A DNA stretch of 64,000 nt from IMGVR_UViG_3300020172_001601:1-64000; one strand, 5' to 3'. Numbered from the stretch's first letter, positions 1-64,000 are shown. Made by a program: numbers and translations. Notes: a model not told the origin generated them from the sequence alone.

Positions 1-594
1 CAAGGCAACCAAGGCAGACAGGGATTCCAAGGCAACCAGGGTTTTGCCGGTAATCAGGGCGTACAAGGCACGCAAGGCAACCAGGGCTTCGTTGGCAACC
101 AAGGCGCTCAGGGCGCACAAGGAAACCAAGGTTTCGTCGGCAATCAGGGTGCGCAGGGTCCGCAAGGCAACCAAGGTCGTCAAGGTAATCAAGGAAATCA
201 AGGCACACAAGGCAACCAGGGTTTTGTCGGTAATCAAGGCGCTCAGGGCGCACAAGGAAACCAAGGCGCTCAAGGTACGCAAGGTACTCAAGGATTCCAG
301 GGCAACCTTGGAAACCAGGGCAACCAAGGTTTTATTGGAAACCAAGGCAACCAAGGCGCACAAGGCACTGCGATGACATCGCAAAACTTTAGTTTCACTA
401 ATGCGAACTTGTCGTCTGGTGTATACACGGCAAACCATAACTCTGGTCGTCAGTATTGGACTGTGGAAGTATATGACAACAACAATAGGTTGGTTATGCC
501 TGACAGTATAACTTGTACCAACACCAATAACTTGGCAATTGATTTGACGACATTCGGAGTAATCACAGGCACTTGGACAGCGAGGTTATCATAA
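1..594 (+). CDS. Collagen-like (Gly-X-Gln) fibre protein, C-terminal part (5' truncated by window)
   Basis: Frame 1 from base 1 reads QGNQGRQGFQGNQGFAGNQG... with no stop and runs into the listed ORF 373..594, which is its C-terminal beta-rich domain. Confidence 0.9.
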   Translation, partial: QGNQGRQGFQGNQGFAGNQGVQGTQGNQGFVGNQGAQGAQGNQGFVGNQGAQGPQGNQGRQGNQGNQGTQGNQGFVGNQGAQGAQGNQGAQGTQGTQGFQGNLGNQGNQGFIGNQGNQGAQGTAMTSQNFSFTNANLSSGVYTANHNSGRQYWTVEVYDNNNRLVMPDSITCTNTNNLAIDLTTFGVITGTWTARLS

Positions 595-595
595 T

Positions 596-1966
596 ATGAG
601 AATAGGATCATTCCAATTCGCAGGGACACGTCTAAGGGACGCCTCAACAATCAACCTTACGAACGTAAGCACTAGCTTGACTATTGCTGGTTCGTATCAC
701 TTGATTACGGTGTCTACTGGTGCGTGTACTTTGACGAGCATCAGCGGACCTGCCACAAACGGCACGACCGTTCAGTTTATTCTGACGACCGGCTCACAGA
801 ACTGCACCTTCAATACAGGTGGAAACATCACAGATGCCGTGACGCTCGCAGCGGGCGGCATGGTTTCGTATATGTATGACGGAACAGCATGGCTCATGCT
901 TCATACAGATGGTCCACAAGGCGCACAAGGAAACCAGGGAGTACAAGGATCACAGGGAAATCAGGGCTTTATAGGAAATCAAGGCAACCAAGGTCATCAA
1001 GGAAATCAAGGTAATCAGGGTTTCCAAGGCGCACAAGGATTCCAGGGTTTCCAAGGCTCACAAGGCAATCAAGGCTACCAAGGCAACCAAGGAAACCAAG
1101 GTCATCAAGGCAATCAAGGAAACCAGGGTTTCGTTGGCAACCAAGGCGCTCAAGGTCCACAAGGAAACCAGGGTTTCGTTGGCAATCAAGGCGCTCAAGG
1201 CCCGCAAGGAAATCAGGGCTTCGTCGGCAACCAGGGTGCGCAAGGCGCACAAGGAGTTCAAGGCAACCAGGGCTTCGTCGGCAACCAAGGAAACCAAGGT
1301 AATCAAGGCAACCAAGGAACCCAGGGCTTCCAAGGCGCACAAGGCTTTCAAGGCAATCAGGGATTCGTCGGAAACCAAGGAAATCAAGGCGCTCAAGGCA
1401 CCCAAGGCGCACAAGGCAACCAAGGTAATCAAGGCTTCGTCGGCAACCAAGGAAATCAGGGCAATCAAGGAAACCAAGGATTCCAAGGAAACCAAGGAAA
1501 TCAAGGAAATCAAGGTAATCAAGGTTTCCAGGGCAACCAAGGAAATCAAGGAAATCAAGGTAATCAAGGCTTCGTCGGCAACCAAGGAAACCAGGGAAAT
1601 CAAGGCAATCAAGGCTTCCAAGGAAACCAAGGCTTTGTTGGAAATCAAGGTCCGCAGGGCTTCCAGGGCAACCAAGGCGCACAGGGAAATCAGGGCAACC
1701 AGGGCAATCAGGGATTTGTTGGCAACCAAGGTACGTTTGCTTGGAATTTAGCTGGGGCCTTTACTACGTTTAACAATGCCAGCTTATCTGGCTCGACGTT
1801 CTCGTATACTCACAGCCGAGCGGTCGATTGTGCCTTCGTGGTATATGATAACAATAACATAGAAATCATCCCGGCAGCGATTACCCGAACTTCTACCTCT
1901 CAGGTGACGATAGATTTACAGGGCTTTACACCGTTAACGGGGACATGGACATTGGTAGTATTGTAA
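596..1966 (+). CDS. Collagen-like (Gly-X-Gln) fibre protein
   Basis: About 90 consecutive G-X-Y triplets (GNQ/GFQ/GAQ/GFV) between N- and C-terminal beta-rich domains; C-terminal domain resembles that of the upstream gene. Confidence 0.9.
   Translation: MRIGSFQFAGTRLRDASTINLTNVSTSLTIAGSYHLITVSTGACTLTSISGPATNGTTVQFILTTGSQNCTFNTGGNITDAVTLAAGGMVSYMYDGTAWLMLHTDGPQGAQGNQGVQGSQGNQGFIGNQGNQGHQGNQGNQGFQGAQGFQGFQGSQGNQGYQGNQGNQGHQGNQGNQGFVGNQGAQGPQGNQGFVGNQGAQGPQGNQGFVGNQGAQGAQGVQGNQGFVGNQGNQGNQGNQGTQGFQGAQGFQGNQGFVGNQGNQGAQGTQGAQGNQGNQGFVGNQGNQGNQGNQGFQGNQGNQGNQGNQGFQGNQGNQGNQGNQGFVGNQGNQGNQGNQGFQGNQGFVGNQGPQGFQGNQGAQGNQGNQGNQGFVGNQGTFAWNLAGAFTTFNNASLSGSTFSYTHSRAVDCAFVVYDNNNIEIIPAAITRTSTSQVTIDLQGFTPLTGTWTLVVL
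911..1729 (+). repeat. 9-nt degenerate coding repeat (ggN aaY caR) encoding the collagen triple-helix region
   Basis: Direct reading of the sequence; period of 9 nt. Confidence 0.9.
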
Positions 1967-3190
1967 ATGAAAATCTCGATCTTTACACCAACGCATAAGC
2001 CGGTCTATCTCGACCGGCTTTTTCGTTCTCTTCAAGAACAGACATATTCAAATTGGGAATGGGTAATTGTTCCCAATAATGGTGCAGTAGTTGAGCCAAT
2101 TGATGATGAGCGAGTGAAGATATTTCCTTGCAATGATTCAGATAACATTGGTTTTCTAAAACGATTTGCTGCTGGCAAAGCCACTGGTGAAGTTGTTGTT
2201 GAAGTCGATCATGACGACGAGCTTTTCTCAACTGCCATTGAAGAATGTGCGAATGCTTTTGCGGACCCCACTGTTGATTTTGCATATTCCAATTGCTGTG
2301 ATGTGCGAGAGAATTATGTCCCTCGTTGTTTCGGTCCAGAATGGGGTTGGATCAATCGTGTTTGCAAATTCAAGAATCATGATTTGATTGAAACTGTTTC
2401 GTTCCCGCCAGACCCCGCTTCAATTAGCAAAATATGGTACGCTCCGAATCACTTCCGGGCGTGGCGTAAAGAGTTCTATGATCGTATTGGCGGTCATGAC
2501 GCCTCTTTGGATGTGTTGGATGACCAGGATATTATGTGTCGCACATATATTCAGGGCAAAATGTTCCACATCGACAAGCCACTTTATGTTTATCATTTGC
2601 ACCAGGAAAACACCTGCTATGGCGAGAAGAATGCCAAGATTCAAGAAGGCACGTTGATGCTTCACGACAAGTACATCTACCAACTTGTCGAACGATGGTG
2701 CGATCTGAACAATTTGCGCAAAATTGACTTATGCGGTGGTCACAGCAAGCCCGAAGGTTATGAAAGCGTCGATCTCGAACGTGGCGACATACAAGCAGAC
2801 TTGAATGGGCGATGGCCTTTTGAAGATGGTTCGGTAGGCGTGTTTCGTGCGCATGATGCTCTCGAACACTTGAAAGACCCAATCAATACGATGAAGGAAG
2901 CATATCGGTGTCTGGCTCCAGACGGTTGGTTCTTGACTCAAACGCCGTCTACAGATGGTCGTGGGGCCTTCCAAGACCCAACGCACGTTAGTTTCTGGAA
3001 CAGCAATAGTTTCTGGTATTACACCCGTGCAGAGCAGGCGAAGTACATCAATACTCCGGCTCGTTTTCAATTGAATCGCATCAAGAATTTCTTCCCAAGC
3101 GATTGGCATCAGTTCCACAATATCATGTACGTCAAAGCAGATTTGCTGAAGCTCACTGATACTCGGATTCCTGGTGGAGTAGAAATCTGA
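1967..3190 (+). CDS. GT2 glycosyltransferase fused to a class I SAM-methyltransferase-like domain
   Basis: N-terminal ISIFTPT...SLQEQTYSNWEWVIV and VDHDD (DxD); C-terminal IDLCGG...ADLN..WPF...HDALEHL...GAFQDPTH. Confidence 0.85.
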   Translation: MKISIFTPTHKPVYLDRLFRSLQEQTYSNWEWVIVPNNGAVVEPIDDERVKIFPCNDSDNIGFLKRFAAGKATGEVVVEVDHDDELFSTAIEECANAFADPTVDFAYSNCCDVRENYVPRCFGPEWGWINRVCKFKNHDLIETVSFPPDPASISKIWYAPNHFRAWRKEFYDRIGGHDASLDVLDDQDIMCRTYIQGKMFHIDKPLYVYHLHQENTCYGEKNAKIQEGTLMLHDKYIYQLVERWCDLNNLRKIDLCGGHSKPEGYESVDLERGDIQADLNGRWPFEDGSVGVFRAHDALEHLKDPINTMKEAYRCLAPDGWFLTQTPSTDGRGAFQDPTHVSFWNSNSFWYYTRAEQAKYINTPARFQLNRIKNFFPSDWHQFHNIMYVKADLLKLTDTRIPGGVEI

Positions 3191-3228
3191 TTGTAAAGCA
3201 AAATAAATACTTGCTGCACGTCTTGGCC

Positions 3229-3257
3229 TTTATTCAATCTTTGGCTTGGTCTATAAT
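3229..3257 (+). promoter_or_regulatory. Sigma70-like promoter TTTATT-N17-TATAAT
   Basis: Perfect TATAAT with 17-nt spacing, upstream of an AAGGAG RBS and the AAA ATPase. Confidence 0.6.
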
Positions 3258-3285
3258 CCCCTGACCTCGAACAAGGAGTTGTCAT

Positions 3286-4371
3286 ATGTCGAAATCCGAC
3301 AGCCAAGAACTAAATGAAATTCTGAAGAACGCCCCAGATACTCCGTCGTATGACGGAGATGGCGACTCAAATCCATGTTTCAGCAATGATATTGCTGTCT
3401 GTGGTGAACCCGTCGCCTCATTTGATCGTGGTCTGGGTGGATATTGCCAGTGGTCCACATCGGACGGCAAGCGATATATTCCATCCAGCAAGACGGCCAA
3501 GAAGCTCACGCCGGGCGTCTACGATATTCTTCACAGTAACACAATCGGTTTGTATTTTGAACAGATTCCAGTTCTCACAACTGGTTTGATCCGGTTTCCA
3601 GAAACCAATTCCGATAAGGTCGTATCTGAAATTCAGAAGTTCTGGAAAAAGGAAAACATCTTCCGCAGTTACAACCTGACTTACAAGCGTGGCATTATTC
3701 TGTGGGGACCGCCAGGATCGGGCAAGTCTTGCACAATCCAGTTGATTATGCGTGACGTTGTAGAGCGTGGCGGCGTGGTCATCAAGTTTACGCATCCCAC
3801 ATTATTCCTTGAAGGCATTCGCAAGTTCCGAGAGATTCAGCCGGACACGCCTGTTGTCGTATTGATGGAAGATATTGACAGCATCTTGGAGATGTACTCT
3901 GAGAGTGAAGTTCTCAATATCCTCGATGGCGTGAATCAGATCGAGAAGGTTGTCTTCTTGGCGACGACCAATTACCCAGAAAAGCTGGGCGCTCGTATTG
4001 TCAATCGTCCTTCTCGATTTGACAAGCGATTTAAGATCGGCCATCCGAATGCCGAAAGCCGTCGTATTTACTTTGAATACATCATCGGCAAAGACAAGGT
4101 GAAGGCTCTCAAGATCAATCTGGATCAGTGGGTTGAAGACACTGAAGAATTCAGTATTGCTCACTTGAAGGAGTTGTTCACTGCGGTTGTTATTCTCGGC
4201 GACGAATATGAGGATGCCATCGAATCTCTTTCTTTGATGAAAGAAGATAAGCCTGATTCATCCAATGATGAAGCACGGAAGTCAATGGGATTCGGAAATG
4301 GCAAGAAGGCTCGCCGTCACAAGTTGACTGCTGATGATTCATTCATGAAAGAATTAAGGGAGATGGAATGA
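3286..4371 (+). CDS. AAA+ ATPase (BCS1-like single AAA module)
   Basis: YKRGIILWGPPGSGKS (Walker A), LMEDID (Walker B), LNILDG, ATTNYPEKL..RIVNRPSRFD (SRH). Confidence 0.9.
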   Translation: MSKSDSQELNEILKNAPDTPSYDGDGDSNPCFSNDIAVCGEPVASFDRGLGGYCQWSTSDGKRYIPSSKTAKKLTPGVYDILHSNTIGLYFEQIPVLTTGLIRFPETNSDKVVSEIQKFWKKENIFRSYNLTYKRGIILWGPPGSGKSCTIQLIMRDVVERGGVVIKFTHPTLFLEGIRKFREIQPDTPVVVLMEDIDSILEMYSESEVLNILDGVNQIEKVVFLATTNYPEKLGARIVNRPSRFDKRFKIGHPNAESRRIYFEYIIGKDKVKALKINLDQWVEDTEEFSIAHLKELFTAVVILGDEYEDAIESLSLMKEDKPDSSNDEARKSMGFGNGKKARRHKLTADDSFMKELREME

Positions 4372-4967: not shown

Positions 4968-5840
4968 ATGCACCATCAGCAATTGTGGGAGATGCCTCTT
5001 GCACGTCGATATTTTGAATATCTCGTTCGGTTCTTCGTATTTTACAGCATCGGCATGTACCTCCTTGAGATGGAGGTTACAAAGGCTCATCATAGCGACG
5101 GATTCTGGCTCTTGAATGAGCGATTCGTCGCTATGTTTTTTACGGTGGAGTACCTTGTCCGATGGGCAATATCGGACAACAAACGGCACTTCCCGTTCAA
5201 ACTATTGTCGATAATTGACCTGATTGCCATCGTGCCTTTTTATGTCGGGTTCTTTGTTGACGATCACACGCTTGATATAATTCGCACGCTTCGAGTGTTG
5301 CGAATGTTCAAGCTGGTCAGGTACAGTCCTGCCCTGATGAACGTCATGGAAGGCATAAAAAAGGTCAAAAGCGAACTGTATGTCGTTGGATATATTGTTT
5401 GTATTGTTGTGGTGTTTAGTTCGGTTTTAATCCTGCAATTTGAAAAGGACGCACAGCCAGACAAGTTCGACAAGCCGTCCGATGCTTTGTGGTGGTCCTT
5501 CGTGACGATGGCCACAGTTGGCTATGGTGATTTGGCTCCCGTGACCCTTGCCGGTCGGGTAGTAGCGATCTTTACTATGGTCATTGGCATTGGTATATTC
5601 GGTGTGTTCGTGAGTCTCATCGGCAGCGCCCTTATAGTGACGTGGAAGGAACAACAAGATGAGCAAAGAAAATCTAATGCAAGCCTGCAATCTAAGCCTC
5701 CAGATGAAGGGCTTGGACGGCGATCCGAAATACAAGAAGCGACTGAAGTGGGAAATCGAGGAAATCTTAGCCAGGAACAAGTCGGACTATTTTTGGAACC
5801 TGTACAGCAGTCGAACACGCTATCCGCAAAATCAAAATAA
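4968..5840 (+). CDS. Voltage-gated 6-TM potassium channel (KvAP-like)
   Basis: Selectivity filter TVGYGD, pore helix DALWWSFVTMAT, S4 RTLRVLRMFKLVR, S3 IIDLIAIVPFY; AAGGAG RBS. Confidence 0.92.
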   Translation: MHHQQLWEMPLARRYFEYLVRFFVFYSIGMYLLEMEVTKAHHSDGFWLLNERFVAMFFTVEYLVRWAISDNKRHFPFKLLSIIDLIAIVPFYVGFFVDDHTLDIIRTLRVLRMFKLVRYSPALMNVMEGIKKVKSELYVVGYIVCIVVVFSSVLILQFEKDAQPDKFDKPSDALWWSFVTMATVGYGDLAPVTLAGRVVAIFTMVIGIGIFGVFVSLIGSALIVTWKEQQDEQRKSNASLQSKPPDEGLGRRSEIQEATEVGNRGNLSQEQVGLFLEPVQQSNTLSAKSK

Positions 5841-8460
5841 TCTGTTGATCTGTTGGCTTTTGGGCATCGTCCCCGATCACAATATCGACCAAGAGCCTAA
5901 GTGCGAATACGGCGAATATCCCGACATTGACGTGGATTATTTGCCTATTGTTCGAGACTACCTGAAGACCGTGTGGGCCAAAGACACATTTGGTTCTGAC
6001 TATGTTTGTAATATCGGCAACTACACCACGTTCGGCATTAAGTCGGCTCTGATCGACATGGCCCGTGTTCACGGAGAAAGCCGAGAAGAAGTCCAGGCTC
6101 TCACAAAGAATCTCGACGCCAAGGACGATGAAGGCAAGGTTCTCACTTGGGATGCAGCGATGAAGCTGTATCCTGAGTTGAAGAAGTATTGTGAAATAGA
6201 TGATACTCACAAGCGTATTGCTGACGCAGCCAAGCGACTTCTTCACCGCAATCGAGGCATGGGCGTTCATGCTGGTGGTTTGATTATTGCCAATGCTCCT
6301 CTCTCTGATCTCGTTCCGCTCGTCAAGCGTAAAGACAGTCCACAAGCATCTGCATGGGTGGAAGGGCTGCATGGTCAGGACTTAGGCCCTATGGGTCTAG
6401 TTAAGTTTGACTTGTTGGTTATTTCCAATCTGCTTCAGATTGCTCGTTGCTGTGAGATGGTCAAGAAGCGGCATGGTTTAGTTGGCATTTGCAATAAGCC
6501 CGGCGAACCTGACTGGACCGATGTTCCAGCTTGGCGTGATGACCCCACATCATTGGCTATGGCCAATATTGGTGACTTGAAGTGTATCTTCCAATTTGAT
6601 TCTGAAGGTATGCGTGGACTCGTTCGTGCGGGTGGCGTAGACCGATTTGAAGACTTGGTTGCATACACCGCTTTGTTCCGTCCAGGTCCGCTCGGCATGA
6701 AGATGCAGGAGCGATACGTCGAACGTAAGCGTGGTCGTGAAAAGTATACACTTCACCCGCTGGTGAAGCCTATTCTTGATAAGACTTACGGAGTTTTGAC
6801 TTATCAAGAACAAATTATGCGTATCCTCAACGTGGTAGGTGAAATCCCGTTGAAGGATTGCGAATTGGTTCGTAAGGCGATCAGCAAGAAGAAGGTTGAA
6901 GGGTTCATCAAATACAAGGAGATGTTCGTTCTCAACGGCCAGAGAAACCTGGGCTGCAACGAAGAAGAAATCAATCACTTGTGGAATCAGATTGAAGCCT
7001 TCGCTGAATACGGTTTCAATCTCAGTCACGCCGTCGCATACACCTATATCTCGGCATGGTTGTTGTATCTCAAGGCTCACTATCCTCATGAGTTCTATGC
7101 TTCGATGCTGAGTTGTGAAACGCTCAGTGAGAAGATTAAAGAATACAAGATGGAAGCCAAGATTCACGGCGTCGATATGAATCGTTTGGACATCAATAAG
7201 TCCGATGTGAATTTCGATCTCCAAGGCGACATGATCTATTTCGGCCTGAGCAACATCAAGGGTTTAGGCGAGGCTCCGGCCAAGCGTATTGTTGCCGCTC
7301 AACCTTACAAGTCTTTTGAAGACTTCGTAACTCGGTTCGGCACAGATGCCAGCGTATTGAAGCCCATTTTGGGACTTCGATGTTTCCGTGATCGTGACCC
7401 TGTTACTTTGTGGAAGTTTGCTGAACACTTCAAGGATTGTGCCAAGAAGATTGAGGACAAGAAGAAGCGTTATCATGCGTCGATGATTAAATACGATCAA
7501 GAGTTCAAGGAACTCTTGCCGTTGGAAATCCGCACACTGGCTCAGTTGGAGAATGGACTGGACAATGCCTTCGATAGTGAAGGCTGGCGGGTTCAATGTG
7601 ACAAAGATGAAGAGATTGAAGTCGATAAGGAAGTGCTATGTGAGAAGGATTCCCCAGGGGCCACAGAGCGAGTAGTGGTGGAAGATATTGAGGTTGAAGG
7701 AACTGGTTTATATCTCCAGCGGGAAATCATTAAGTATTACCATGTCGGAAAAGTAAAAAAGACGTGGAATTTGTGGAAAGAATTACGCAAACTATGGCAA
7801 CGTAGGAAAAAGAGCATTGAGCGATACCAGAGCATCGAACGGGGCAACCTGCCGACGCTTCTCAATTTTGACGCTAATGCGTGGGATATTGACGAAGACT
7901 TGATGAAAGAATTCCGTGATCCGGTTGCCTGTGAGGAGAAGTATTACGGATTCGCCTGGATTCACGATCTGGAACGTAGCCCGGATTACAGGGGAAACCT
8001 TACTTTTGCCGATCTGAAGAATAGCATTGATGCTGTTGTTGGCCCGGTTGAACTTCGGGTCAAAAAGGTGGTAAAAACTCAAAGTAAAAAGCGAAAAGAG
8101 TTTACATACTACCAAGTTCTAGCGGAAGACGTGACCGGACAAGAGAATAGGATCAACGTATGGCCAGACGATTGGGAATGGTGGCATACAGAGTTTGGCT
8201 GGGAAGAAGTCGGCGGGAAATCGAAATTCACCGCTGGTAACTTACTTAGAGTAAGGCTCCAGCCTCCGACTGGTGGTTTCAATACTTTCACCCTGGAAAG
8301 CAATCAGGTTGGCAAGTGGCGAAGCCAAAAGCGGTATCACGACAAAGCTGACGATCCACGAGTGTTCGTTATGCAGAAGGGACAGAAAGAAGAAGAAAAA
8401 TTTCTGAGTGATGATGAGGCGATGGAGCAGTTCACAAACTGCACTATGGAACAAAAATGA
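5659..8460 (+). CDS. dnaE: DNA polymerase III alpha subunit (family C), lacking the N-terminal PHP domain
   Basis: PDIDVD, GVHAGG, GLVKFDLL, IFQFDS, ALFRPGP, TYGVLTYQEQIM, FAEYGFNLSHAVAY, YLKAHYP, GLSNIKGLG. Confidence 0.93.
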   Translation: MSKENLMQACNLSLQMKGLDGDPKYKKRLKWEIEEILARNKSDYFWNLYSSRTRYPQNQNNLLICWLLGIVPDHNIDQEPKCEYGEYPDIDVDYLPIVRDYLKTVWAKDTFGSDYVCNIGNYTTFGIKSALIDMARVHGESREEVQALTKNLDAKDDEGKVLTWDAAMKLYPELKKYCEIDDTHKRIADAAKRLLHRNRGMGVHAGGLIIANAPLSDLVPLVKRKDSPQASAWVEGLHGQDLGPMGLVKFDLLVISNLLQIARCCEMVKKRHGLVGICNKPGEPDWTDVPAWRDDPTSLAMANIGDLKCIFQFDSEGMRGLVRAGGVDRFEDLVAYTALFRPGPLGMKMQERYVERKRGREKYTLHPLVKPILDKTYGVLTYQEQIMRILNVVGEIPLKDCELVRKAISKKKVEGFIKYKEMFVLNGQRNLGCNEEEINHLWNQIEAFAEYGFNLSHAVAYTYISAWLLYLKAHYPHEFYASMLSCETLSEKIKEYKMEAKIHGVDMNRLDINKSDVNFDLQGDMIYFGLSNIKGLGEAPAKRIVAAQPYKSFEDFVTRFGTDASVLKPILGLRCFRDRDPVTLWKFAEHFKDCAKKIEDKKKRYHASMIKYDQEFKELLPLEIRTLAQLENGLDNAFDSEGWRVQCDKDEEIEVDKEVLCEKDSPGATERVVVEDIEVEGTGLYLQREIIKYYHVGKVKKTWNLWKELRKLWQRRKKSIERYQSIERGNLPTLLNFDANAWDIDEDLMKEFRDPVACEEKYYGFAWIHDLERSPDYRGNLTFADLKNSIDAVVGPVELRVKKVVKTQSKKRKEFTYYQVLAEDVTGQENRINVWPDDWEWWHTEFGWEEVGGKSKFTAGNLLRVRLQPPTGGFNTFTLESNQVGKWRSQKRYHDKADDPRVFVMQKGQKEEEKFLSDDEAMEQFTNCTMEQK

Positions 8461-8969: not shown

Positions 8970-9510
8970 CGTGGTTTATATCGACACGCCGTATAGACCT
9001 GAAGCTGGCAGCTTTTGCAAGCCCAAGGACATTGACGGCGATAGATATAAAGTTGGACAGTGGTATTATTGTCGAGATTTATTCCACGGCCAACTATACA
9101 ATCTGAGTTTGTTTTTCTTTTCCCATGATTCCACCAAAGGGCATTGCGTAGCCGCTTTTATGCGGAAGGTTGAAGAAATGTTGAATGTGGAGCCACGTTC
9201 AACATTTGGCCCAACTCAACGCAAAACCATTATGTGGATTGAACCGTCTCGGTGGTGGACAGTTCGAGCGATGCGTAGATCATTGTTCACAATATTGCTC
9301 CGAGCAGGATGCCAATATTCGCCAAGCAAGGATAATTTTGAAGAAGCACTCTTCAGCGATCCTTACACCATGAGTACCAAGTATGCAGTTAAAAGATTCT
9401 TTGCTGGTAATACAGCATATACTGGAAGAAAGCGTGGTTGGTACAAACAGTTTTATGAAAGTAAACCAACAGAACAAGAAGTCAATTCTTTGTTAGTTGA
9501 GCCTTACTAA
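8950..9510 (+). CDS. Hypothetical protein, paralog of 52248..52886
   Basis: Start re-called to ATG 8950 (AGGA RBS). Motifs CR..F, FSH, STF..T, RSL.TI.LR.G..Y...KDNF..ALF are shared with the paralog. Confidence 0.75.
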   Translation: MTSKFGDVVYIDTPYRPEAGSFCKPKDIDGDRYKVGQWYYCRDLFHGQLYNLSLFFFSHDSTKGHCVAAFMRKVEEMLNVEPRSTFGPTQRKTIMWIEPSRWWTVRAMRRSLFTILLRAGCQYSPSKDNFEEALFSDPYTMSTKYAVKRFFAGNTAYTGRKRGWYKQFYESKPTEQEVNSLLVEPY

Positions 9511-10017
9511 TTGTGGTTTGCGTGCAAACCAAACGCCGTCCTCTTCTTTGAATTCTTTTACGCCTAACGATTCAATTGTTTTCTTTATTGAATCATTCAT
9601 GGTAAAGTTGTGTCCAGCAATGATTCCTCCGGGTTTGATTTTTGGATACCAGTTTTTTATGTCTTTGATTTCGCCGCCGTCTATAAAGACAGCAAAGACG
9701 GCCTCGTGTCCTACGTTGTGGGATGCAACTTCAGGCGTTACCATCATCGTACTGATACAGTCGATCACTCCAGCCTTGGTCATATTTTCGTTGAACTTGG
9801 CCAATGTTTCTCTAAAAGTATCGACACAGACAATTTTCACGTTCTTGCCAGACATTTTTGCTCTGGATGCCAAATAGCATGACGACTTGCCCAGCCATGT
9901 GCCGATTTCGATAATCGTGTCATTTTTGCTGGCTTCTCGAATGATTTGATCGTATATCTTGGCATATCCGAACCATCCCTCGATGTCCTGCCAGCCGAAT
10001 TTGTTGTTTAAGTCCAT
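9493..10017 (-). CDS. Class I SAM-dependent methyltransferase (Methyltransf_24-like)
   Basis: IIEIGTWLGKSS, CVDTF, VFIDG, WYPKIKPGGIIAGH. Confidence 0.85.
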   Translation of the reverse strand: MDLNNKFGWQDIEGWFGYAKIYDQIIREASKNDTIIEIGTWLGKSSCYLASRAKMSGKNVKIVCVDTFRETLAKFNENMTKAGVIDCISTMMVTPEVASHNVGHEAVFAVFIDGGEIKDIKNWYPKIKPGGIIAGHNFTMNDSIKKTIESLGVKEFKEEDGVWFARKPQLVRLN

Positions 10018-10092
10018 GTGCTTCTTTCATAATTTGTTGGGTAGCTCTATATAAGAGAGGGGAGATTGCCCTAAATTGGAGAGGAAACAAAT

Positions 10093-10677: not shown

Positions 10678-10738
10678 TCTTGTTTATGTCCATTGCATAG
10701 TTTAGAATTCAAGCTCCTCTAACTCATAGGAGAATGCA

Positions 10739-12904: not shown

Positions 12905-12908
12905 GAAT

Positions 12909-14006: not shown

Positions 14007-14023
14007 GTGCTTTCTCTCTCTAC

Positions 14024-17202: not shown

Positions 17203-17216
17203 TTAAGGAGCCTAAA

Positions 17217-53185: not shown

Positions 53186-54231
53186 AAAGAGTTTTACTTA
53201 CTGGCGTCGGTGGTTTCATCGGCGCTCACTGCGTTGAATATTTCCTCAAAAACACAGATTGGTTCATAATCGGTTTGGATTCCTTCAGACACAAAGGAAC
53301 GTATTCCAGGTTGTCTGAAATAGAAAATCTTGATCCATCCCGATTTCAATTGTTAAGGCATGATCTTTCAGTTCCTCTTGATGTTCAGCTTGAAAACAGA
53401 ATCATGTCTCGTCGCATTGGCGACCGTGGGCAGACAGTTGAAGCAAAGCTCGACTACATCATCAATATGGCCTCTGATAGTGCTGTAGAGCGGTCTGTGA
53501 GCGATCCCGGCTGGTGCTGGCGAAACAATTGCGAACTCGCTTACAACATGCTTGAGTTCGCTCGTCGTGTTAAGCCAAAGATATTCTTTCATGTCAGCAC
53601 TGATGAAGTGTATGGCGACTGTCCAGAAGACTATTCTCATCCAGAGTGGGATGTGATTGTGCCATCGAATCCATATGCTGCTTCTAAGGCGGCACAAGAG
53701 GCTCTGGCAATTTCTTATTGGCGAACTTTTGATGTTCCTGTAGTTTTGACCAATTGCATGAACTGCATTGGTACATGGCAAGACAAAGAAAAGTTCCTTC
53801 CTAAGTTGATTTGGAAAATAGCCACAGATCAACAAATGGAAATTTACGCCGATACGAAGCCAGATGGCGAGTGTGTGATTGGCAGCAGGTTTTATCTACA
53901 TTGTGACAATCACGCTGACGTATTCAAGTATTTGGCGAGTAAACCAATTGCCATGTACAACAAAGGCGATCAAAGACCTGACAGATACAATGTCGTTGGC
54001 GAAGTGGAACTAGACAACTTAGAAATGGCAAAGTTGGTTGCTCAAATCATGGGCAAAGATTTGAAGTGTAAGTTGGTTCCTTCTGAATCTGCTCGGCGTG
54101 GTTATGATCGTCGATATGCTTTAGATGGAAGTAAACTCAAAAACATGGGCTGGACTCCACCTGTTGAATTTCGCAAGGGATTAGAAGACATCGTTAAATG
54201 GACTCTGGAGCATCCGTGGTGGGTAGTCTAG
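53182..54231 (+). CDS. rmlB: dTDP-glucose 4,6-dehydratase-like extended SDR
   Basis: TGVGGFIG, STDEVYG, PSNPYAASKA, EKFLPK, DRRYALD. Confidence 0.88.
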   Translation: MKRVLLTGVGGFIGAHCVEYFLKNTDWFIIGLDSFRHKGTYSRLSEIENLDPSRFQLLRHDLSVPLDVQLENRIMSRRIGDRGQTVEAKLDYIINMASDSAVERSVSDPGWCWRNNCELAYNMLEFARRVKPKIFFHVSTDEVYGDCPEDYSHPEWDVIVPSNPYAASKAAQEALAISYWRTFDVPVVLTNCMNCIGTWQDKEKFLPKLIWKIATDQQMEIYADTKPDGECVIGSRFYLHCDNHADVFKYLASKPIAMYNKGDQRPDRYNVVGEVELDNLEMAKLVAQIMGKDLKCKLVPSESARRGYDRRYALDGSKLKNMGWTPPVEFRKGLEDIVKWTLEHPWWVV

Positions 54232-56373: not shown

Positions 56374-56673
56374 ATGAAATATCTAGCTTTTGTCGTAGCT
56401 TTGCTTGCGGGCAGCTTTTTCGCTGCCCCAGCAAACGCTCAGTTTGTGCATTATCCACAGCCGCAGGTTTATCCAAGGCCGTATCCGCAAATCAGGGTTT
56501 ATACGGTTTATCCGGTTTATCCCGTCTATCCCGTTTATCGGGTTTATCCGCAATATAACCCATATTTCAACCCATATACGCCGTACTACAACCCGTATCC
56601 GTACCAGCCGTATGTGCCTTATCAGCCGTATCGTCACCAGTACCAGTTCCAGTTCCAAATCTACCGCTGGTGA
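56374..56673 (+). CDS. Secreted Tyr/Pro/Gln-rich low-complexity protein
   Basis: Signal peptide ending ANA; VYP and YNPY repeats; AGGAGG RBS. Confidence 0.75.
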   Translation: MKYLAFVVALLAGSFFAAPANAQFVHYPQPQVYPRPYPQIRVYTVYPVYPVYPVYRVYPQYNPYFNPYTPYYNPYPYQPYVPYQPYRHQYQFQFQIYRW

Positions 56674-59046: not shown

Positions 59047-61161
59047 ATGGCCGTCAAGCAGCAAGATCAAGAAGTTTCGGAACTTGAGTCAATCATCGAA
59101 ACCCTCGACACTTTGTATGAATCGGGCGATGATTGTGTGCATCCGATCACCGGGAAGTTGGTTTCTGACCCGGAATACGATACGCTACGCAAGCGGCTGT
59201 TTGACTTGCATCCCAAGTCCTATATCTTCAAGGACGTGACGGCTTCAAACGCTGTACAGCACAGCAGGAAGGTTCCTCACAATCCTCCGATGGTGTCGAT
59301 CTCCAAGGCTATTGGGCCTTTGCAGGAACGCACCGATACGTTGAAGGATTTCGTCGGCAAGGTTCAGGCAGAACTTGCCTATGCCGACAGCGAAGAGAAG
59401 TATCTTGTGCAAGCCTACAAGCGTGATGGCGTTGCCGTGGCATTGTACTATGAGAACGGCGTCTTGACTCGTGCCGGTCTTCGTCCTCGCAATGGTACTG
59501 ATGGTGAAGACGTGACAGAAAACATCAAGCACGTTGAAGGCGTTCCGACTGAATTGTGGGAACATGACAAAGACGGCAACCGGGTGAAGTTCCTGCCTGT
59601 CACTTGTTCCATTCGTGGCGAAATCGAATGCCGCAAGTCTGTCTTCCGCAAGGTCGTGGAAGATTGGAATGATCCCAAGTTCGGCCTCGATTCTGAACCC
59701 AAGAATCCTCGCAACTACTCAGCGGGCAGCATTCGTCAGTTCTCGAATCCGGGTGTCACGAAGGAGCGTCGTTTGACGTTCACTGGATATTCTATCCTCG
59801 GCTGGAATGCCAAGGACAATAGCCCTGCTCCGTTCAAGACGGAGATTGAGCGGGCGAAGTACAGCAATGCCAAACTTCGCATTCCGTTCGTGCAGGTTCG
59901 TCCTTTCCGTTGGTCCGATCTTCAAATCCTCGAAGACTTGTCTTCGCAATTGGATTATGAAGTTGACGGCGTGGTTATTTCCGTCAACAACCTCGAAGAC
60001 GCCGAACAGATGGGTACTCACGGTGGCACGGCTACCGGAAATCCCAAGGCCAAGATTGCTTGGAAGTTCGCCGAAGAGTCGGCAGTGGTCGAAGTCGAAG
60101 GCATCACTTGGACGCCGGGTCGCAGTGGCAAGCTGACGCCTGTGTTGAACTTCAAGGGTGTCAAGCTGGATGGCACAACCGTCAGTCAATGTACTGGTCA
60201 CAGCCTTGGTTTCCTCGACGGAACCAGCAAGGCCAGCCTGGGCGAGATCGGCAAGTGGACGGAAGTTCGCATCATCAAGTCCGGCAAGATCATTCCAAAG
60301 GTGATCGAGATCGTCAAGAAAGGCTTCAGCAAGTTGGAAGTTCCGACGAAGTGTCCTTCGTGTAACTCCAAACTGGAAACCCGTCAGGGCGGCGACGGCA
60401 AAGACTTGGTGTGTACGTCAGACTTCTGTGGCGTTCGGGCCGTTGCTCGTCTTGTTCACTTCCTTTCCACGATTGGAGTGAAGGGAATTTCGGACAGCAT
60501 CCTGACCCGTCTGCTGGACGAGAAGTTGGTTCAATATCCTGATGAACTGTATAGCCTTTCGGTGGGCAAGTTGACGACTATTGGATTTTCCAAGCGTCAA
60601 GCGTTGTTGATTGTGTCTCGGCTGTATCTGCATGATGATCCTGCTCATGCTACTGATGATGAATTGGATCAATTCATCAAGCAGAAGAAGACCATCAAGA
60701 TTCCGGCGTGGCAGTTCTTTGCTTCCTTCGGCATTCCCGGCACGGGCAAGTCCGCAGGGCAGGCGCTTATCAATCACTTCGGGACGTTCGACGCTATTGG
60801 GTCTGCAACCCTGGCTCAACTTCAGGAAGTGGATGGGCTGGGCGAAACTTCGGCCAATGCCATCGTCGCCTTCTTTGGCGAACATGATGATATGGTGAAG
60901 CAATTGCTCAAGTTCATCGAGCCGGAAGGCAAGAAGCAAGGCAAGTTGTCTGGCCAGACGTTCGTGTTCACGGGTGGCTTCGATGGTGGCAAGGCCGCTT
61001 GGGAAAAGAAGGTTATTGACCTGGGTGCCTCGGTGTCAGGATCGGTCAGCAAGACGACCAATTATGTGGTGGTCGGAACCGATGCAGGCAGCAAGGAAGC
61101 CAAGGCCAAGCAACTCGGCATCAAGATGCTGAGTCCCGATCAGCTTGAAAAGCTGCTGTAG
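59047..61161 (+). CDS. ligA: NAD-dependent DNA ligase
   Basis: SDPEYD, KRDG adenylation motif, RGE, NPRN..AG, YEVDGVV, AWKF, C4 zinc finger, HhH, BRCT (FVFTG...GSVSKTT). Confidence 0.95.
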   Translation: MAVKQQDQEVSELESIIETLDTLYESGDDCVHPITGKLVSDPEYDTLRKRLFDLHPKSYIFKDVTASNAVQHSRKVPHNPPMVSISKAIGPLQERTDTLKDFVGKVQAELAYADSEEKYLVQAYKRDGVAVALYYENGVLTRAGLRPRNGTDGEDVTENIKHVEGVPTELWEHDKDGNRVKFLPVTCSIRGEIECRKSVFRKVVEDWNDPKFGLDSEPKNPRNYSAGSIRQFSNPGVTKERRLTFTGYSILGWNAKDNSPAPFKTEIERAKYSNAKLRIPFVQVRPFRWSDLQILEDLSSQLDYEVDGVVISVNNLEDAEQMGTHGGTATGNPKAKIAWKFAEESAVVEVEGITWTPGRSGKLTPVLNFKGVKLDGTTVSQCTGHSLGFLDGTSKASLGEIGKWTEVRIIKSGKIIPKVIEIVKKGFSKLEVPTKCPSCNSKLETRQGGDGKDLVCTSDFCGVRAVARLVHFLSTIGVKGISDSILTRLLDEKLVQYPDELYSLSVGKLTTIGFSKRQALLIVSRLYLHDDPAHATDDELDQFIKQKKTIKIPAWQFFASFGIPGTGKSAGQALINHFGTFDAIGSATLAQLQEVDGLGETSANAIVAFFGEHDDMVKQLLKFIEPEGKKQGKLSGQTFVFTGGFDGGKAAWEKKVIDLGASVSGSVSKTTNYVVVGTDAGSKEAKAKQLGIKMLSPDQLEKLL

Positions 61162-62374: not shown

Positions 62375-63073
62375 GTGATCGCACGATATACTCCTGGCAA
62401 AGCAAAAGCCATGTTGCTCGAATTAGTGACAATTGAAACACCAGCCGCCTTCAAGGTGGTTAGCAGGGAGGCTATTGATCCGACGAAGTATATTTTCTTG
62501 GTCGAAGCGATTGCGCACAAGTTTCGGAAAAGGTTCCGGGGTAAATTCGAGAAGATCGAGGATACCGAGCCATATTCCATTGCTTCAATGGAGTTGGTCA
62601 AGGCCGCTGCCGGATACGATCCTGAAGTGAATGAAGACTTTAGCCGGTACGCATTTCGTGCGATGCGAAATGGAATTATCGAAGCCATTCGTCATCGTAA
62701 TCGTCAAAAGCGAACTGCTGAATTTGCCAAGTTGACCACTCTTGAGTGGCAAGAATTGCCAGAGAAAGAACAAGTTCTGTCTGCCGATATTCCCTCGGAT
62801 GTATATCAGACCTTGATGGCGAATCACCCGGACGATACCGAACAAGATCGTGCTGATAAGGCACTCTTGACGGAAATCTATATCCAGGGCAAAAAGATTC
62901 CATTCATTGCGGAGAAGTATGGAATCAGCAGAATGACGGTATACAACCGTCTTCGTCGCATCATTGGAAAAATCCGTCAGCGTCACAGCGACCTGATTGA
63001 GTCACACGGGGGAATACTCGATGAATGTCCTGAAAGAGAGCCTTGTCGTCTTCACCGAAGGGGCGAGGGTTAA
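62375..63073 (+). CDS. Sigma70-family (ECF-like) sigma factor
   Basis: LVKAAAGYDP...FSRYAFRAMRNGI (region 2); IAEKYGISRMTVYNRLRR (region 4 HTH); start 62375 or 62411. Confidence 0.85.
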   Translation: MIARYTPGKAKAMLLELVTIETPAAFKVVSREAIDPTKYIFLVEAIAHKFRKRFRGKFEKIEDTEPYSIASMELVKAAAGYDPEVNEDFSRYAFRAMRNGIIEAIRHRNRQKRTAEFAKLTTLEWQELPEKEQVLSADIPSDVYQTLMANHPDDTEQDRADKALLTEIYIQGKKIPFIAEKYGISRMTVYNRLRRIIGKIRQRHSDLIESHGGILDECPEREPCRLHRRGEG

Positions 63074-63527
63074 TTTCAAGGTATACGGCCATTTGGTTCC
63101 AGTGTTTGCAGGCTTGCTGGATGGTGAGCCTCAGATATTCGGAGTTGTGTGGGAAGATGCCGCTCAGAAAGAGGCGTTTGCCCGTCAGGTTCGTGATTGG
63201 ATCGCCGCAGATCGTCTCAAGGAATATATCATGGTGGTCGAAGCATGGACCGCCAATATTCCAGAGGGCGACCAGTATAAAGTCCGGGATTGGCTCAAAT
63301 CTCACGGAACCCTGCAAAATTGGCCCGACCGCAGCGAAGTGGTCATGGTCCTATATTGTTCGCCAACCGAAGAAATTGAGTATACAGCAGACATTATTCG
63401 TGGTAGAATCCCGGCACCAATGATCGGGGAATGGAAAATCAGCCAGCGTAAAGTGAAGTTCAACCACGAAGACTTCACTACTCGATTTCAAGGTTTGTTC
63501 CTTAAAAGCAAAGCGGGGCAAAACTAA
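63021..63527 (+). CDS. Hypothetical protein
   Basis: GGGGGA RBS before ATG 63021; EAW...P.R.EV motif. Confidence 0.7.
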   Translation: MNVLKESLVVFTEGARVNFKVYGHLVPVFAGLLDGEPQIFGVVWEDAAQKEAFARQVRDWIAADRLKEYIMVVEAWTANIPEGDQYKVRDWLKSHGTLQNWPDRSEVVMVLYCSPTEEIEYTADIIRGRIPAPMIGEWKISQRKVKFNHEDFTTRFQGLFLKSKAGQN

Positions 63528-64000
63528 TGCCATCACAACAAGAAATCGTCGATGCAGTCGCTCGCCAGTTGAAGGGCAAAGACCTCAGCCAGCAAGCAGT
63601 CATGGTTCTTCAGAAGGCTACGGCACGGGTGCTTGAGCGAATCAAGCAGAACGTCGATGCCCAAATCAAAGAAGACTCTTCGCCCATCGTTGAGAAGTTC
63701 GTCAAGAATGCCGCCACGAAAATGTCGGCAATGACCCAGCAATGGGCCGATGGCGTCAAGAATGATCTTGTCGTATTCCCGGAAGGAACTCGATATATTT
63801 GGCGTGATGGTCAAATGACAACCATCATCGTTGAGCAGCAGCCGCAGGTTCGCCATATCAACGTCTATGGCAAGATTTACTTGCTGTCGCTGCCATACGT
63901 CCAGTTCATCATGACGTTCAAGAACCACCAGTTGACACAATCTCTTCGGGTGACTTGCACCAAGAAACCAATCACTGATCTCGATCAGGCGGCGAACTTT
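63527..64000 (+). CDS. E2-like protein, paralog of 61232..62332 (3' truncated; absent from ORF track)
   Basis: Manual translation MPSQQEIVDAV...VVFPEGTRYIWRDG...IVEQQPQVRHI...YLLSLPYVQF...KKPITDLD, open to the window end. Confidence 0.75.
   Translation, partial: MPSQQEIVDAVARQLKGKDLSQQAVMVLQKATARVLERIKQNVDAQIKEDSSPIVEKFVKNAATKMSAMTQQWADGVKNDLVVFPEGTRYIWRDGQMTTIIVEQQPQVRHINVYGKIYLLSLPYVQFIMTFKNHQLTQSLRVTCTKKPITDLDQAANF

What the first reader, a model, noticed from the sequence alone, without database searches (positions are those of the whole stretch)
1..64000. Window is part of a huge phage genome, host possibly a Planctomycete
Seen: dense, translationally coupled, mostly + strand genes, many hypotheticals, virion-like proteins, and single copies of host-like genes (dnaE, ligA, infC, rpsU, def, dnaJ, phoH, sigma factors) outside their bacterial operons. 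infC has no rpmI/rplT beside it, and the groES-like gene has no groEL. Established: this mix typifies huge phages. Inference: the DUF5658, peptidase-MA-like and Tyr/Pro-rich secreted proteins resemble Planctomycete families, and few Planctomycete phages are known.
Basis: partly seen in the sequence, partly recalled or inferred. Interest (0 to 1): 0.6.

Follow-up and report, generated by a model that had tools for sequence, protein, structure and literature searches.

The report
Fragment of a freshwater huge phage
The window is the first 64 kb of a 340-kb piece of a very large freshwater bacteriophage that carries its own translation, chaperone and replication genes; which bacterium it infects is still open, and a Planctomycete is one candidate among several.

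Summary
The "huge phage" reading holds. The window is the start of a single 340,341-bp IMG/VR virus record with a CheckV completeness of 69%. Relatives with 87-100% identical proteins sit on contigs of 390-603 kb. The contig has no rRNA. It has 47-52 tRNA genes in one array, a T4-type terminase ATPase, a gp6-type baseplate wedge and a fragment of a gp23-type capsid gene. Pfam confirms DnaE, LigA, IF3, bS21, Def, DnaJ, PhoH and two sigma factors. A GroES-like domain is just over the cut-off. IF3 lies between a TPP enzyme and an unknown gene, not beside rpmI/rplT, and this module is syntenic in many metagenomic phage contigs.

The host claim is not established. DUF5658 and Peptidase_MA_2 gave no match. 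IF3 trees place the phage clade next to or among Planctomycetota and other PVC bacteria (SH-aLRT 76-96). An AU test does not reject a Pseudomonadota affinity (p = 0.20), and raw similarity is flat across phyla. DnaJ, LigA and bS21 carry no host signal. One relative is binned in a "Neisseriaceae" MAG. Bacteroidota were never tested.

Unexplained: terminase and capsid genes are present only as conserved N-terminal pieces.

This is a new member of a known kind, of moderate interest.

The parts
1..1966 (+). Two collagen-repeat (G-X-Y) proteins (1-594, open at the contig end; 596-1966). They are likely fibre or virion-surface proteins. The contig starts inside their tandem repeats.
   Evidence: Pfam Collagen, 6.7e-23 and 3.4e-47; TRF arrays at 28-1632
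1967..4371 (+). A GT2 + methyltransferase fusion (1967-3190) and an AAA ATPase (3286-4371)
   Evidence: Pfam
4968..5840 (+). Voltage-gated-type ion channel protein (Ion_trans + Ion_trans_2)
   Evidence: Pfam 1.4e-32 and 1.1e-18
5659..8460 (+). DNA polymerase III alpha (DnaE) without a PHP domain hit. The true start is probably downstream of 5840.
   Evidence: Pfam DNA_pol3_finger 8.8e-37; DNA_pol3_alpha from model position 100 onward; HHH_6
9493..14650 (.). Mixed-strand block: methyltransferase (9493-10017, -), PhageMetallopep (10739-11287, +), DHH/DHHA1 phosphoesterase (11714-12904, +), Mpo1-like (12696-13205, +), glycosyltransferase (13206-14063, -), methyltransferase (14024-14650, -)
   Evidence: Pfam
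17199..18292 (+). bS21 (17199-17492), an RHH/CopG-like protein (17489-17773, weak) and peptide deformylase (17789-18292). The bS21-def order is kept in relative L331.
   Evidence: Pfam S21 4.6e-13, Pep_deformylase 4.3e-18; synteny
19983..21170 (+). Indoleamine 2,3-dioxygenase-like gene, a lineage-specific insertion
   Evidence: Pfam IDO 2.8e-61; absent at this place in relative L331
21247..22455 (+). Pro-rich (10%) 402-aa protein with an N-terminal hydrophobic segment, conserved in the phage clade
   Evidence: composition; 85 homologues; Atlas neighbours
23223..24014 (+). PspA/IM30-like coiled-coil membrane protein, conserved in relatives
   Evidence: Pfam 1.1e-05, below cut-off; PF04012 hits in relatives L022 and L281
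27867..37732 (+). Conserved core module: dCMP deaminase (27867-28316), 270-aa unknown, TPP enzyme (29137-30768), IF3 (30768-31346), 437-aa unknown, Fe-S_biosyn (32639-33010), aldehyde dehydrogenase (33266-34780), truncated UDP-glucose dehydrogenase (35012-35860), GroES-like (36180-36653), DnaJ (36650-37732)
   Evidence: Pfam; same gene order in phage contigs L020, L022, L281, L282 and L284
39079..43065 (+). dUTPase (39079-39600), GT2 (39886-40641), 2OG-Fe(II) oxygenase (40638-41321), PhoH (42301-43065)
   Evidence: Pfam
46936..48564 (+). Amidoligase_2 (46936-47949) and a sigma-70 family factor (48022-48564)
   Evidence: Pfam
53182..54231 (+). NAD-dependent sugar epimerase/dehydratase
   Evidence: Pfam GDP_Man_Dehyd 8e-36
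56374..56673 (+). 99-aa Tyr/Pro-rich protein (22% Tyr, 18% Pro) with an N-terminal hydrophobic segment
   Evidence: composition; no Pfam hit; Atlas scores below 0.9
59047..61161 (+). NAD-dependent DNA ligase (LigA) with full domain set
   Evidence: Pfam adenylation, OB, HHH_2 and BRCT domains
62375..63073 (+). Second sigma factor, ECF-like
   Evidence: Pfam Sigma70_r2 3.9e-06; Sigma70_ECF 20.8 bits, just under the cut-off

Best explanation
The window is the left 64 kb of an incomplete genome of a tailed huge phage (Caudoviricetes, T4-type packaging and baseplate lineage) from fresh water. The full genome is probably about 0.45-0.6 Mb.

The window is an early, host-takeover and replication region, not the virion module.

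Shown:
- It encodes bS21, IF3 and peptide deformylase.
- It encodes a DnaJ next to a GroES-like protein.
- It encodes two sigma factors.
- It encodes DnaE, LigA, a DHH phosphoesterase, dUTPase, dCMP deaminase and PhoH.
- It encodes many glycosyl- and methyltransferases.
- It encodes metabolic genes: a TPP enzyme, an aldehyde dehydrogenase, an IDO and an ion channel.
- The dCMP-deaminase / TPP-enzyme / IF3 / ... / GroES-like / DnaJ / dUTPase / GT2 order is conserved in a broad, old clade of metagenomic phage contigs whose IF3 has diverged to below 50% identity.

Inferred from what is established for huge phages (Al-Shayeb 2020, PMC7162821; Chen 2022, PMC9723584):
- bS21 and IF3 are loaded on host 30S subunits to bias initiation towards phage mRNAs.
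- Def and the co-chaperones process and fold the large load of phage proteins using host DnaK and GroEL.
- The sigma factors time phage transcription on the host core polymerase.
- The nucleotide and replication enzymes make replication largely independent of the host.

The host phylum is not determined. PVC bacteria (Planctomycetota, Verrucomicrobiota) are the leading guess, at about one in three.
For: - Contig identity: a single contig of 340,341 bp, flagged as an IMG/VR virus record, 'linear', CheckV completeness 69%.
- RNA genes: Rfam over the whole contig finds 47 tRNAs and nothing else; ARAGORN finds 52, clustered at 72.8-101 kb. There is no rRNA or tmRNA.
- Virion genes: TerL ATPase at 296300-297199 (phrog_5989 1.3e-27, phrog_2 6.5e-25); baseplate wedge at 326760-328316 (phrog_219 2.7e-31); gp23 family PF07068 at 54.8 bits.
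- TerL relatives: the nearest GenBank TerL is the 595-kb uncultured phage LR756511 (42% identity), then the jumbo myoviruses Phosso, PAU, RsoM2USA, PA5oct and XacN1.
- Larger relatives: the identical IF3 lies on a 390,142-bp contig; aldehyde dehydrogenase is 94% identical on a 462,616-bp contig and 87% identical on a 602,679-bp contig.
- Synteny of the IF3 module in L020, L022, L281, L282 and L284.
- IMG/VR holds 74 viral contigs with an IF3 gene.
- Habitat: freshwater and sediment metagenomes, 19 studies.
- Both contig ends lie in tandem repeats, which explains the assembly break.
- Window gene content by Pfam.
Against: - No complete major capsid, portal, sheath or terminase nuclease was found on the 340 kb. 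Virion evidence therefore rests on TerL-N, one baseplate protein and an MCP fragment.
- About 30 of roughly 68 large ORFs outside the window, and none of the small ones, were scanned against PHROGs.
- The functional roles of bS21, IF3, DnaJ and the sigma factors are inferred from other phages. Nothing here shows expression or activity.
- The genome size estimate rests on CheckV and on the contig lengths of relatives, not on a closed genome.
Confidence: 0.9

Rival explanations
1. The host is a Planctomycete, or another member of the PVC superphylum. The phage IF3 was captured from such a host lineage.
For: - In a scan of GTDB genomes, 18 of the 80 best IF3 matches are Planctomycetota. The best identity (55-56%) is the bona fide bacterial locus L025, which has infC-rpmI-rplT-pheST context.
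- IQ-TREE (LG+C20), 92 rows: phage clade plus 18 Planctomycetota form one side of a branch, SH-aLRT 96.
- 118 rows: the phage supergroup is sister to all labelled Planctomycetota, support 76.
- 59 rows: a bipartition of phage with Planctomycetota, Verrucomicrobiota, Kiritimatiellota and Krumholzibacteriota has support 92.
- The highest IF3 score in any sampled phylum is 183 bits, in Planctomycetota.
- Atlas neighbours of the Pro-rich 402-aa protein are labelled Verrucomicrobiota, and a 27%-identical homologue lies on a true Verrucomicrobiota chromosome contig.
- The only IDO homologue in the 50-genome panel is in an Isosphaeraceae MAG.
- Large phages predicted to infect Planctomycetes are mentioned for Lac Pavin (PMC9875498).
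Against: - The AU test does not reject phage + Pseudomonadota (delta lnL 19.2, p = 0.204).
- FastTree on 240 rows does not nest the phage clade in the labelled Planctomycetota.
- Identities are flat at 47-56% across phyla: 173.5 bits in 301 Verrucomicrobiota, 172.6 in 101 Bacillota, and 181.7 for a Myxococcota-like representative.
- No IF3 above 56% identity was found in 401 Planctomycetota genomes, so any capture is ancient and need not reflect today's host.
- The DnaJ clade falls outside all bacteria. LigA and bS21 carry no signal.
- IDO is absent from 401 Planctomycetota genomes at E <= 1e-30.
- DUF5658 and Peptidase_MA_2 gave no match.
Confidence: 0.33
2. The host is a Proteobacterium, for example a freshwater betaproteobacterium.
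For: - A syntenic relative (IF3 65% identical) is deposited as contig RXKI01000004.1 of a 'Neisseriaceae bacterium' MAG, GCA_003962895.1.
- All cultured phages with the most similar TerL infect Proteobacteria: Sinorhizobium, Sphingomonas, Ralstonia, Pseudomonas, Xanthomonas and Erwinia.
- The AU test does not reject an IF3 clade with Pseudomonadota.
Against: - Co-binning of one 70-kb contig is weak evidence; the contig is plainly phage.
- Cultured jumbo phages are heavily biased towards Proteobacteria.
- In every ML tree the phage IF3 lies away from the Pseudomonadota clade.
- TerL identity to those phages is only 28-33%.
Confidence: 0.25
3. The host is from a phylum not tested here, such as Bacteroidota, which hosts many freshwater bS21-encoding and >500-kb phages.
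For: - Published bS21-encoding freshwater phages and the largest Lac Pavin phages are assigned to Bacteroidetes (PMC9723584 per its listing, not opened here; PMC9875498).
- The closest GenBank TerL and MCP belong to a 595-kb uncultured phage.
- No Bacteroidota reference entered my trees. The one genome labelled 'Bacteroidaceae' sits in the Bacillota sample.
Against: - No true Bacteroidota IF3 appeared among the best 80 genome hits.
- About a third of starts have an SD-like 4-mer upstream against 15% background. From my own knowledge, this is more than Bacteroidota-type leaders usually show.
Confidence: 0.2
4. The contig is not a virus but part of a cellular genome (a reduced symbiont) or a giant plasmid-like element.
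For: Many cellular-type genes are present (IF3, bS21, DnaJ, DnaE, LigA, aaRS-like, 50 tRNAs). No complete capsid, portal or sheath gene was found on 340 kb.
Against: - There is no rRNA and only one ribosomal protein gene was found. infC lacks rpmI/rplT.
- TerL ATPase, baseplate wedge, MCP fragment, RnlA-type RNA ligase and PhageMetallopep are present.
- The tRNAs sit in a single array.
- IMG/VR classes it as a virus.
- Most ORFs have no family match.
Confidence: 0.02

Closest known systems
Huge phages from metagenomes (Al-Shayeb et al. 2020, PMC7162821), in particular uncultured phage LR756511.1 (595,163 bp)
   Same: - Closest GenBank TerL (42% identity over the ATPase half) and closest MCP motif (78% over 51 residues).
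- Genome class above 200 kb.
- Large tRNA sets.
- Translation initiation factors, which that paper mentions (search listing; the rest of its gene inventory I know from memory, not from a reading here).
   Different: - LR756511 has a full 619-aa TerL frame and a full 497-aa MCP. Here only the N-terminal pieces are present.
- There is no nucleotide-level similarity.
- Clade membership in the named clades of that paper was not tested.
Cultured T4-type jumbo myoviruses: Sinorhizobium phage Phosso (469 kb), Sphingomonas phage PAU, Ralstonia phage RsoM2USA, Pseudomonas phage PA5oct, Xanthomonas phage XacN1
   Same: TerL ATPase 28-33% identical; gp6-type baseplate wedge and RnlA-type RNA ligase PHROGs.
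   Different: - Those phages infect Proteobacteria and have one-piece TerL genes (for example Phosso, 532 aa).
- T4 portal and sheath families were not found here.
- The IF3/TPP-enzyme/DnaJ module was not examined in them.
Freshwater bS21-encoding phages (Chen et al. 2022, PMC9723584)
   Same: A phage-borne bS21 gene in large freshwater phages; a proposed role in taking over translation initiation.
   Different: - The abstract line of that paper gives genomes up to 331 kb, and the Bacteroidetes host assignment is from my own knowledge.
- bS21 here is divergent (at most 29.5 bits to 50 bacterial genomes).
- Here it sits on the + strand beside def.

Membership tests
Huge/jumbo tailed phage (Caudoviricetes, genome >200 kb) | Contiguous viral genome sequence longer than 200 kb | tested here: met
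   One contig of 340,341 bp with no N; IMG/VR virus record, 69% complete
Huge/jumbo tailed phage (Caudoviricetes, genome >200 kb) | Terminase large subunit | tested here: inconclusive
   The ATPase half is clear (phrog_5989 1.3e-27; 42% identity to the LR756511 TerL). The nuclease half was not found by tblastn or PF17289. The short ORF is conserved in two relatives.
Huge/jumbo tailed phage (Caudoviricetes, genome >200 kb) | HK97-fold major capsid protein | tested here: inconclusive
   PF07068 Gp23 at 54.8 bits, but only model positions 1-55, in an 85-95-aa ORF. The rest of the MCP is absent from the contig. PF05065 gives no hit.
Huge/jumbo tailed phage (Caudoviricetes, genome >200 kb) | Tail or baseplate genes | tested here: met
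   Baseplate wedge phrog_219 2.7e-31 at 326760-328316. Sheath family PF04984 not found.
Huge/jumbo tailed phage (Caudoviricetes, genome >200 kb) | No rRNA or ribosomal operons; cellular-type genes isolated from their operons | tested here: met
   Rfam finds only tRNAs on 340 kb. infC lies between a TPP enzyme and an unknown gene. bS21 lies beside def.
T4-like lineage (gp17/gp20/gp23/gp18 virion module) | gp20-type portal and gp18-type sheath | tested here: not met
   PF07230 and PF04984 give no match on the contig. About 31% of the genome is missing, so absence from the phage is not shown.
Phage of Planctomycetota | Host-derived genes branch within Planctomycetota with support | tested here: inconclusive
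   IF3 leans to Planctomycetota/PVC (SH-aLRT 76-96), but AU p = 0.20 for Pseudomonadota. DnaJ falls outside all phyla. LigA and bS21 are flat.
   PF18902 and PF13485 give no match on G000. The DUF5658 control rang only in archaea.
Phage of Planctomycetota | CRISPR spacer, prophage or physical linkage to a Planctomycete genome | not testable with these tools
   No spacer database is available. No IF3 above 56% identity was found in 401 Planctomycetota genomes.

The most novel reading that the evidence does not exclude
This is a widespread freshwater clade of roughly half-megabase phages that infects PVC bacteria (Planctomycetota or Verrucomicrobiota). For those phyla, to my knowledge (not checked here beyond), almost no phages and no megaphages are characterised. 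Its terminase and major capsid genes are 'genes in pieces': the conserved N-terminal ORFs found here would work with separately encoded partners located elsewhere in the genome.
Probability: 0.15. Interest if true: 0.7.

Novelty: new member of a known kind. Interest (0 to 1): 0.4.

Why it matters
Huge phages that carry ribosomal proteins and initiation factors are known. The contig itself is already in IMG/VR, so the main claim is ordinary.

Three things give it some value.

First, it belongs to a large, old and globally distributed freshwater and sediment clade. Related sequence was found in 19 studies, on contigs up to about 600 kb, so the clade approaches the largest phage genomes. It has a conserved IF3 / TPP-enzyme / DnaJ module and no known host.

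Second, if the PVC lean were confirmed, it would open a host phylum with very few known phages.

Third, the conserved truncated TerL and MCP ORFs are an oddity that a closed genome could explain.

Tried and rejected
- Stop-codon recoding. Two tRNA(CUA) genes raised the idea. Reading TAG, TGA or TAA through gives no region-specific gain, and the stops after the MCP and TerL pieces are mixed TAA/TGA/TAG. Rejected.
- Introns near the MCP piece. Rfam at E <= 1 over 7 kb finds nothing relevant.
- CRISPR arrays on the contig. None found.
- Near-identical GenBank phage. None found.
- MCP, portal or sheath among 30 large ORFs by PHROGs. None found.
- DnaJ, LigA and bS21 as host markers. Uninformative.
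- Aldehyde dehydrogenase as a 'recent' host gene. It is itself conserved across the phage clade, and no named bacterial hit appeared.
- IDO as a donor marker. It is a lineage-specific insertion, but is absent from 401 Planctomycetota genomes.
- Phylum of the bacterial contig L283, whose IF3 (P0263) sits basal to the phage group, via its ATP synthase beta subunit. At most 70% identity to several phyla; unresolved.
- Getting a Bacteroidota sample through the 'Bacteroidaceae' genome L074. Its phylum sample contains Moorellaceae, so it is Bacillota. Bacteroidota remained untested.
- AU test on the 118-row IF3 set. It did not finish in 573 s and was replaced by a 59-row set.
- 'relatives' search.

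Full report
**What the sequence is**

The window is bases 1-64,000 of a single contig of 340,341 bp (47.8% G+C, no N). The genome tool identifies it as an IMG/VR virus record, 'linear', with a CheckV completeness of 69%. That implies a genome near 490 kb.

A crude ORF set gives about 525 genes, 90% coding, 381 on the + strand. Rfam over the whole contig finds 47 tRNAs and nothing else. ARAGORN finds 52, almost all in one array at 72.8-101 kb, plus two tRNA(CUA) at 182 kb. The window itself has none. There is no rRNA and no tmRNA.

Both contig ends lie inside tandem repeats: collagen G-X-Y repeats at 28-1632 and a 33-bp repeat at 339,458-340,341. This is the likely reason the assembly stopped.

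**Check of the observation**

| Gene | Window coordinates | Note |
|---|---|---|
| DnaE | 5659-8460 | no PHP domain hit |
| bS21 | 17199-17492 | |
| peptide deformylase | 17789-18292 | |
| IF3 | 30768-31346 | |
| GroES-like domain | 36180-36653 | only just over the cut-off |
| DnaJ | 36650-37732 | |
| PhoH | 42301-43065 | |
| sigma factors | 48022-48564 and 62375-63073 | |
| LigA | 59047-61161 | |

infC sits between a TPP enzyme and an unknown 437-aa gene. No GroEL is present in the window.

Of 61 same-strand junctions, 23 overlap, and nine of those by 4 bp. Tyr/Pro-rich proteins exist: 56374-56673 has 22% Tyr and 18% Pro.

Two items fail. DUF5658 and Peptidase_MA_2 have no match on the contig. 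The only peptidase-like hit is PhageMetallopep at 10739-11287.

Other content:
- collagen-repeat proteins
- several glycosyl- and methyltransferases
- an AAA ATPase
- an Ion_trans channel
- a DHH phosphoesterase
- an Mpo1-like protein
- an IDO (2.8e-61)
- a PspA-like protein
- dCMP deaminase
- a three-domain TPP enzyme
- an Fe-S_biosyn protein
- an aldehyde dehydrogenase (1e-126)
- a truncated UDP-glucose dehydrogenase
- dUTPase
- a 2OG-Fe oxygenase
- an amidoligase
- a sugar epimerase/dehydratase

**Is it a phage?**

Yes. Outside the window there is a terminase large-subunit ATPase (296,300-297,199; phrog_5989 1.3e-27, phrog_2 6.5e-25). There is also a gp6-type baseplate wedge (326,760-328,316; phrog_219 2.7e-31). 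The gp23 capsid family PF07068 matches at 54.8 bits.

Other phage-type genes outside the window:
- an RnlA-type RNA ligase
- a helicase
- clamp loaders
- a ParB-like protein
- a tRNA nucleotidyltransferase
- a tRNA methyltransferase

The most similar GenBank TerL is that of the 595-kb uncultured phage LR756511 (42%). Next come the jumbo myoviruses Phosso, PAU, RsoM2USA, PA5oct and XacN1 at 28-33%. There is no nucleotide-level match in GenBank phages.

The clade is large. The identical IF3 lies on a 390,142-bp contig. IF3 homologues run in a continuous series from 95% to 60% identity in metagenomes. The aldehyde dehydrogenase is 94% identical on a 462,616-bp contig and 87% identical on a 602,679-bp contig. 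IMG/VR holds 74 viral contigs with an IF3 gene.

The order dCMP deaminase / 270-aa protein / TPP enzyme / IF3 / about 400-aa protein / ... / GroES-like / DnaJ / dUTPase / GT2 recurs in phage contigs whose IF3 is only 46-65% identical to the window's. The module is therefore old and core to the group.

Near-identical or partly identical sequence is held by freshwater and sediment metagenomes of 19 studies.

**How it most likely works**

What is shown is gene content and conservation. What follows is inferred from published work on huge phages (PMC7162821, PMC9723584).

The window is a takeover and replication region:
- bS21 and IF3 would be incorporated into host 30S subunits to favour initiation on phage messages.
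- Def trims nascent chains.
- DnaJ and the GroES-like protein recruit host DnaK and GroEL.
- The two sigma factors redirect host core RNA polymerase.
- DnaE, LigA, the DHH protein, dUTPase, dCMP deaminase and PhoH supply replication and nucleotide metabolism.
- The glycosyl- and methyltransferases may modify DNA, virion or cell surface.

None of this was tested here.

**Host**

This is the weak part of the finding. I tested markers one by one.

*IF3, genome scan.* A scan of one genome per GTDB species returned 80 loci. Eighteen of the 80 are Planctomycetota. The best identity, 55%, is L025, which is truly bacterial (infC-rpmI-rplT-pheS-pheT).

*IF3, first tree.* An LG+C20 tree of 92 rows puts the phage clade on one side of a branch with all 18 Planctomycetota (SH-aLRT 96).

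*IF3, unbiased check.* I then ran a search of 1.84 billion cluster representatives. Several of the nearest ones (P0253, P0260, P0274) turned out to be further phages with the same synteny. P0263 is bacterial. With these added, a 118-row IQ-TREE keeps the enlarged phage group as sister to the Planctomycetota, but at support 76. FastTree on 240 rows does not nest the phages within the labelled Planctomycetota.

*IF3, smaller set.* A 59-row tree gives a PVC-like bipartition with support 92: Planctomycetota, Verrucomicrobiota, Kiritimatiellota, plus Krumholzibacteriota. The AU test on that set does not reject a phage + Pseudomonadota clade (delta lnL 19.2, p = 0.204).

*IF3, raw similarity.* It is flat:

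| Sample | Best IF3 score (bits) |
|---|---|
| 401 Planctomycetota genomes | 183 |
| 301 Verrucomicrobiota genomes | 173.5 |
| 101 Bacillota genomes | 172.6 |
| a Myxococcota-like representative | 181.7 |

*Other markers.*
- DnaJ forms its own long branch outside all bacterial phyla.
- LigA is 29-34% identical to everything.
- bS21 scores at most 29.5 bits.
- IDO is a lineage-specific insertion. It has one homologue in the 50-genome panel, in an Isosphaeraceae MAG at 40% identity, but none in 401 Planctomycetota genomes.
- The Pro-rich 402-aa protein has Atlas neighbours labelled Verrucomicrobiota. A 27%-identical homologue lies on a genuine Verrucomicrobiota contig.

*Against PVC.* A syntenic relative is binned in a 'Neisseriaceae' MAG, and all cultured TerL relatives infect Proteobacteria. 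Both are weak evidence.

*Not tested.* Bacteroidota could not be sampled.

My estimate is PVC about 0.33, Proteobacteria about 0.25 and an untested phylum about 0.2, with the rest open. The literature search found only a passing mention of large phages predicted to infect Planctomycetes (PMC9875498).

**Unexplained**

The two hallmark genes occur only as N-terminal pieces.

TerL is a 299-aa ATPase-only ORF. The same short ORF (292-296 aa) is present in two IMG/VR relatives at 97% and 77% identity. No nuclease domain is found on the contig.

The MCP of LR756511 is 497 aa. Here only residues 74-124 (78% identical) are present, in an 85-aa ORF (124,962-125,216). The same ORF occurs at 89% identity in a collinear relative. 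More distant phages carry the full gene at that place.

Stop-codon recoding and introns do not explain this. Either these are conserved partial paralogues and the intact genes lie in the missing third of the genome, or the genes are split.

**Verdict**

This is a real huge-phage fragment of a known kind. The host claim is an open hypothesis with a mild, non-significant lean in its favour.

Noticed in passing
G000 296300-297199 (outside window; L012 12300-13199): The terminase large subunit is present only as a 299-aa ATPase-domain ORF. The same short ORF is conserved at 97% and 77% identity in two IMG/VR relatives. No nuclease domain was found on the 340-kb contig.
   Followed up: partly
G000 124962-125216 (outside window; L004 962-1216): An 85-aa ORF holds only residues 74-124 of a gp23-type major capsid protein (78% identical to LR756511). 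It is conserved at 89% in a collinear relative. An HNH endonuclease (126549-127196) and a truncated ArgRS-like gene (127653-128963; HVGHLR and KMKSR motifs read by eye) lie downstream.
   Followed up: partly
G000 72800-101233, and 182011-182778: An array of about 49 tRNA genes, and two tRNA(CUA) suppressor-type genes. No genome-wide or local sign of TAG recoding was seen.
   Followed up: partly
window 4968-5840: A phage-borne ion channel (Ion_trans 1.4e-32, Ion_trans_2 1.1e-18). Its 3' end overlaps the longest DnaE frame.
   Followed up: no
window 5659-8460: DnaE matches start at model position 100 of the NTPase domain and no PHP domain is detected, so this is an N-terminally reduced polymerase III alpha.
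   Followed up: no
window 19983-21170: An indoleamine 2,3-dioxygenase-like gene (2.8e-61) is inserted in this lineage only. With the TPP enzyme (29137-30768) and the aldehyde dehydrogenase (33266-34780) it hints at aromatic amino-acid or indole metabolism. This is untested.
   Followed up: partly
window 34732-36267: The UDP-glucose dehydrogenase (35012-35860) lacks the first 80 positions of its N domain and the whole C domain. The flanking 95-aa and 146-aa ORFs have no Pfam hit. It may be a decayed gene.
   Followed up: partly
window 23223-24014: A PspA/IM30-like protein with an N-terminal hydrophobic segment. It is conserved in relatives, where PF04012 hits are recorded.
   Followed up: no
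L022 (GCA_003962895.1, RXKI01000004.1) and L331 (GCA_043536625.1, JBFDID010000989.1): Contigs of this phage clade are deposited inside bacterial MAGs, one of them labelled Neisseriaceae. This is MAG contamination or co-binning.
   Followed up: partly
L282 8765-9919: A related phage contig carries an IS605 OrfB/TnpB (Cas12f-like) gene just after its DnaJ module.
   Followed up: no
window 1-1632 and G000 339458-340341: Both contig ends lie in tandem repeats: collagen G-X-Y repeats, and a 33-bp repeat in a minus-strand ORF.
   Followed up: yes
It is either a coincidence or a table quirk.
   Followed up: yes
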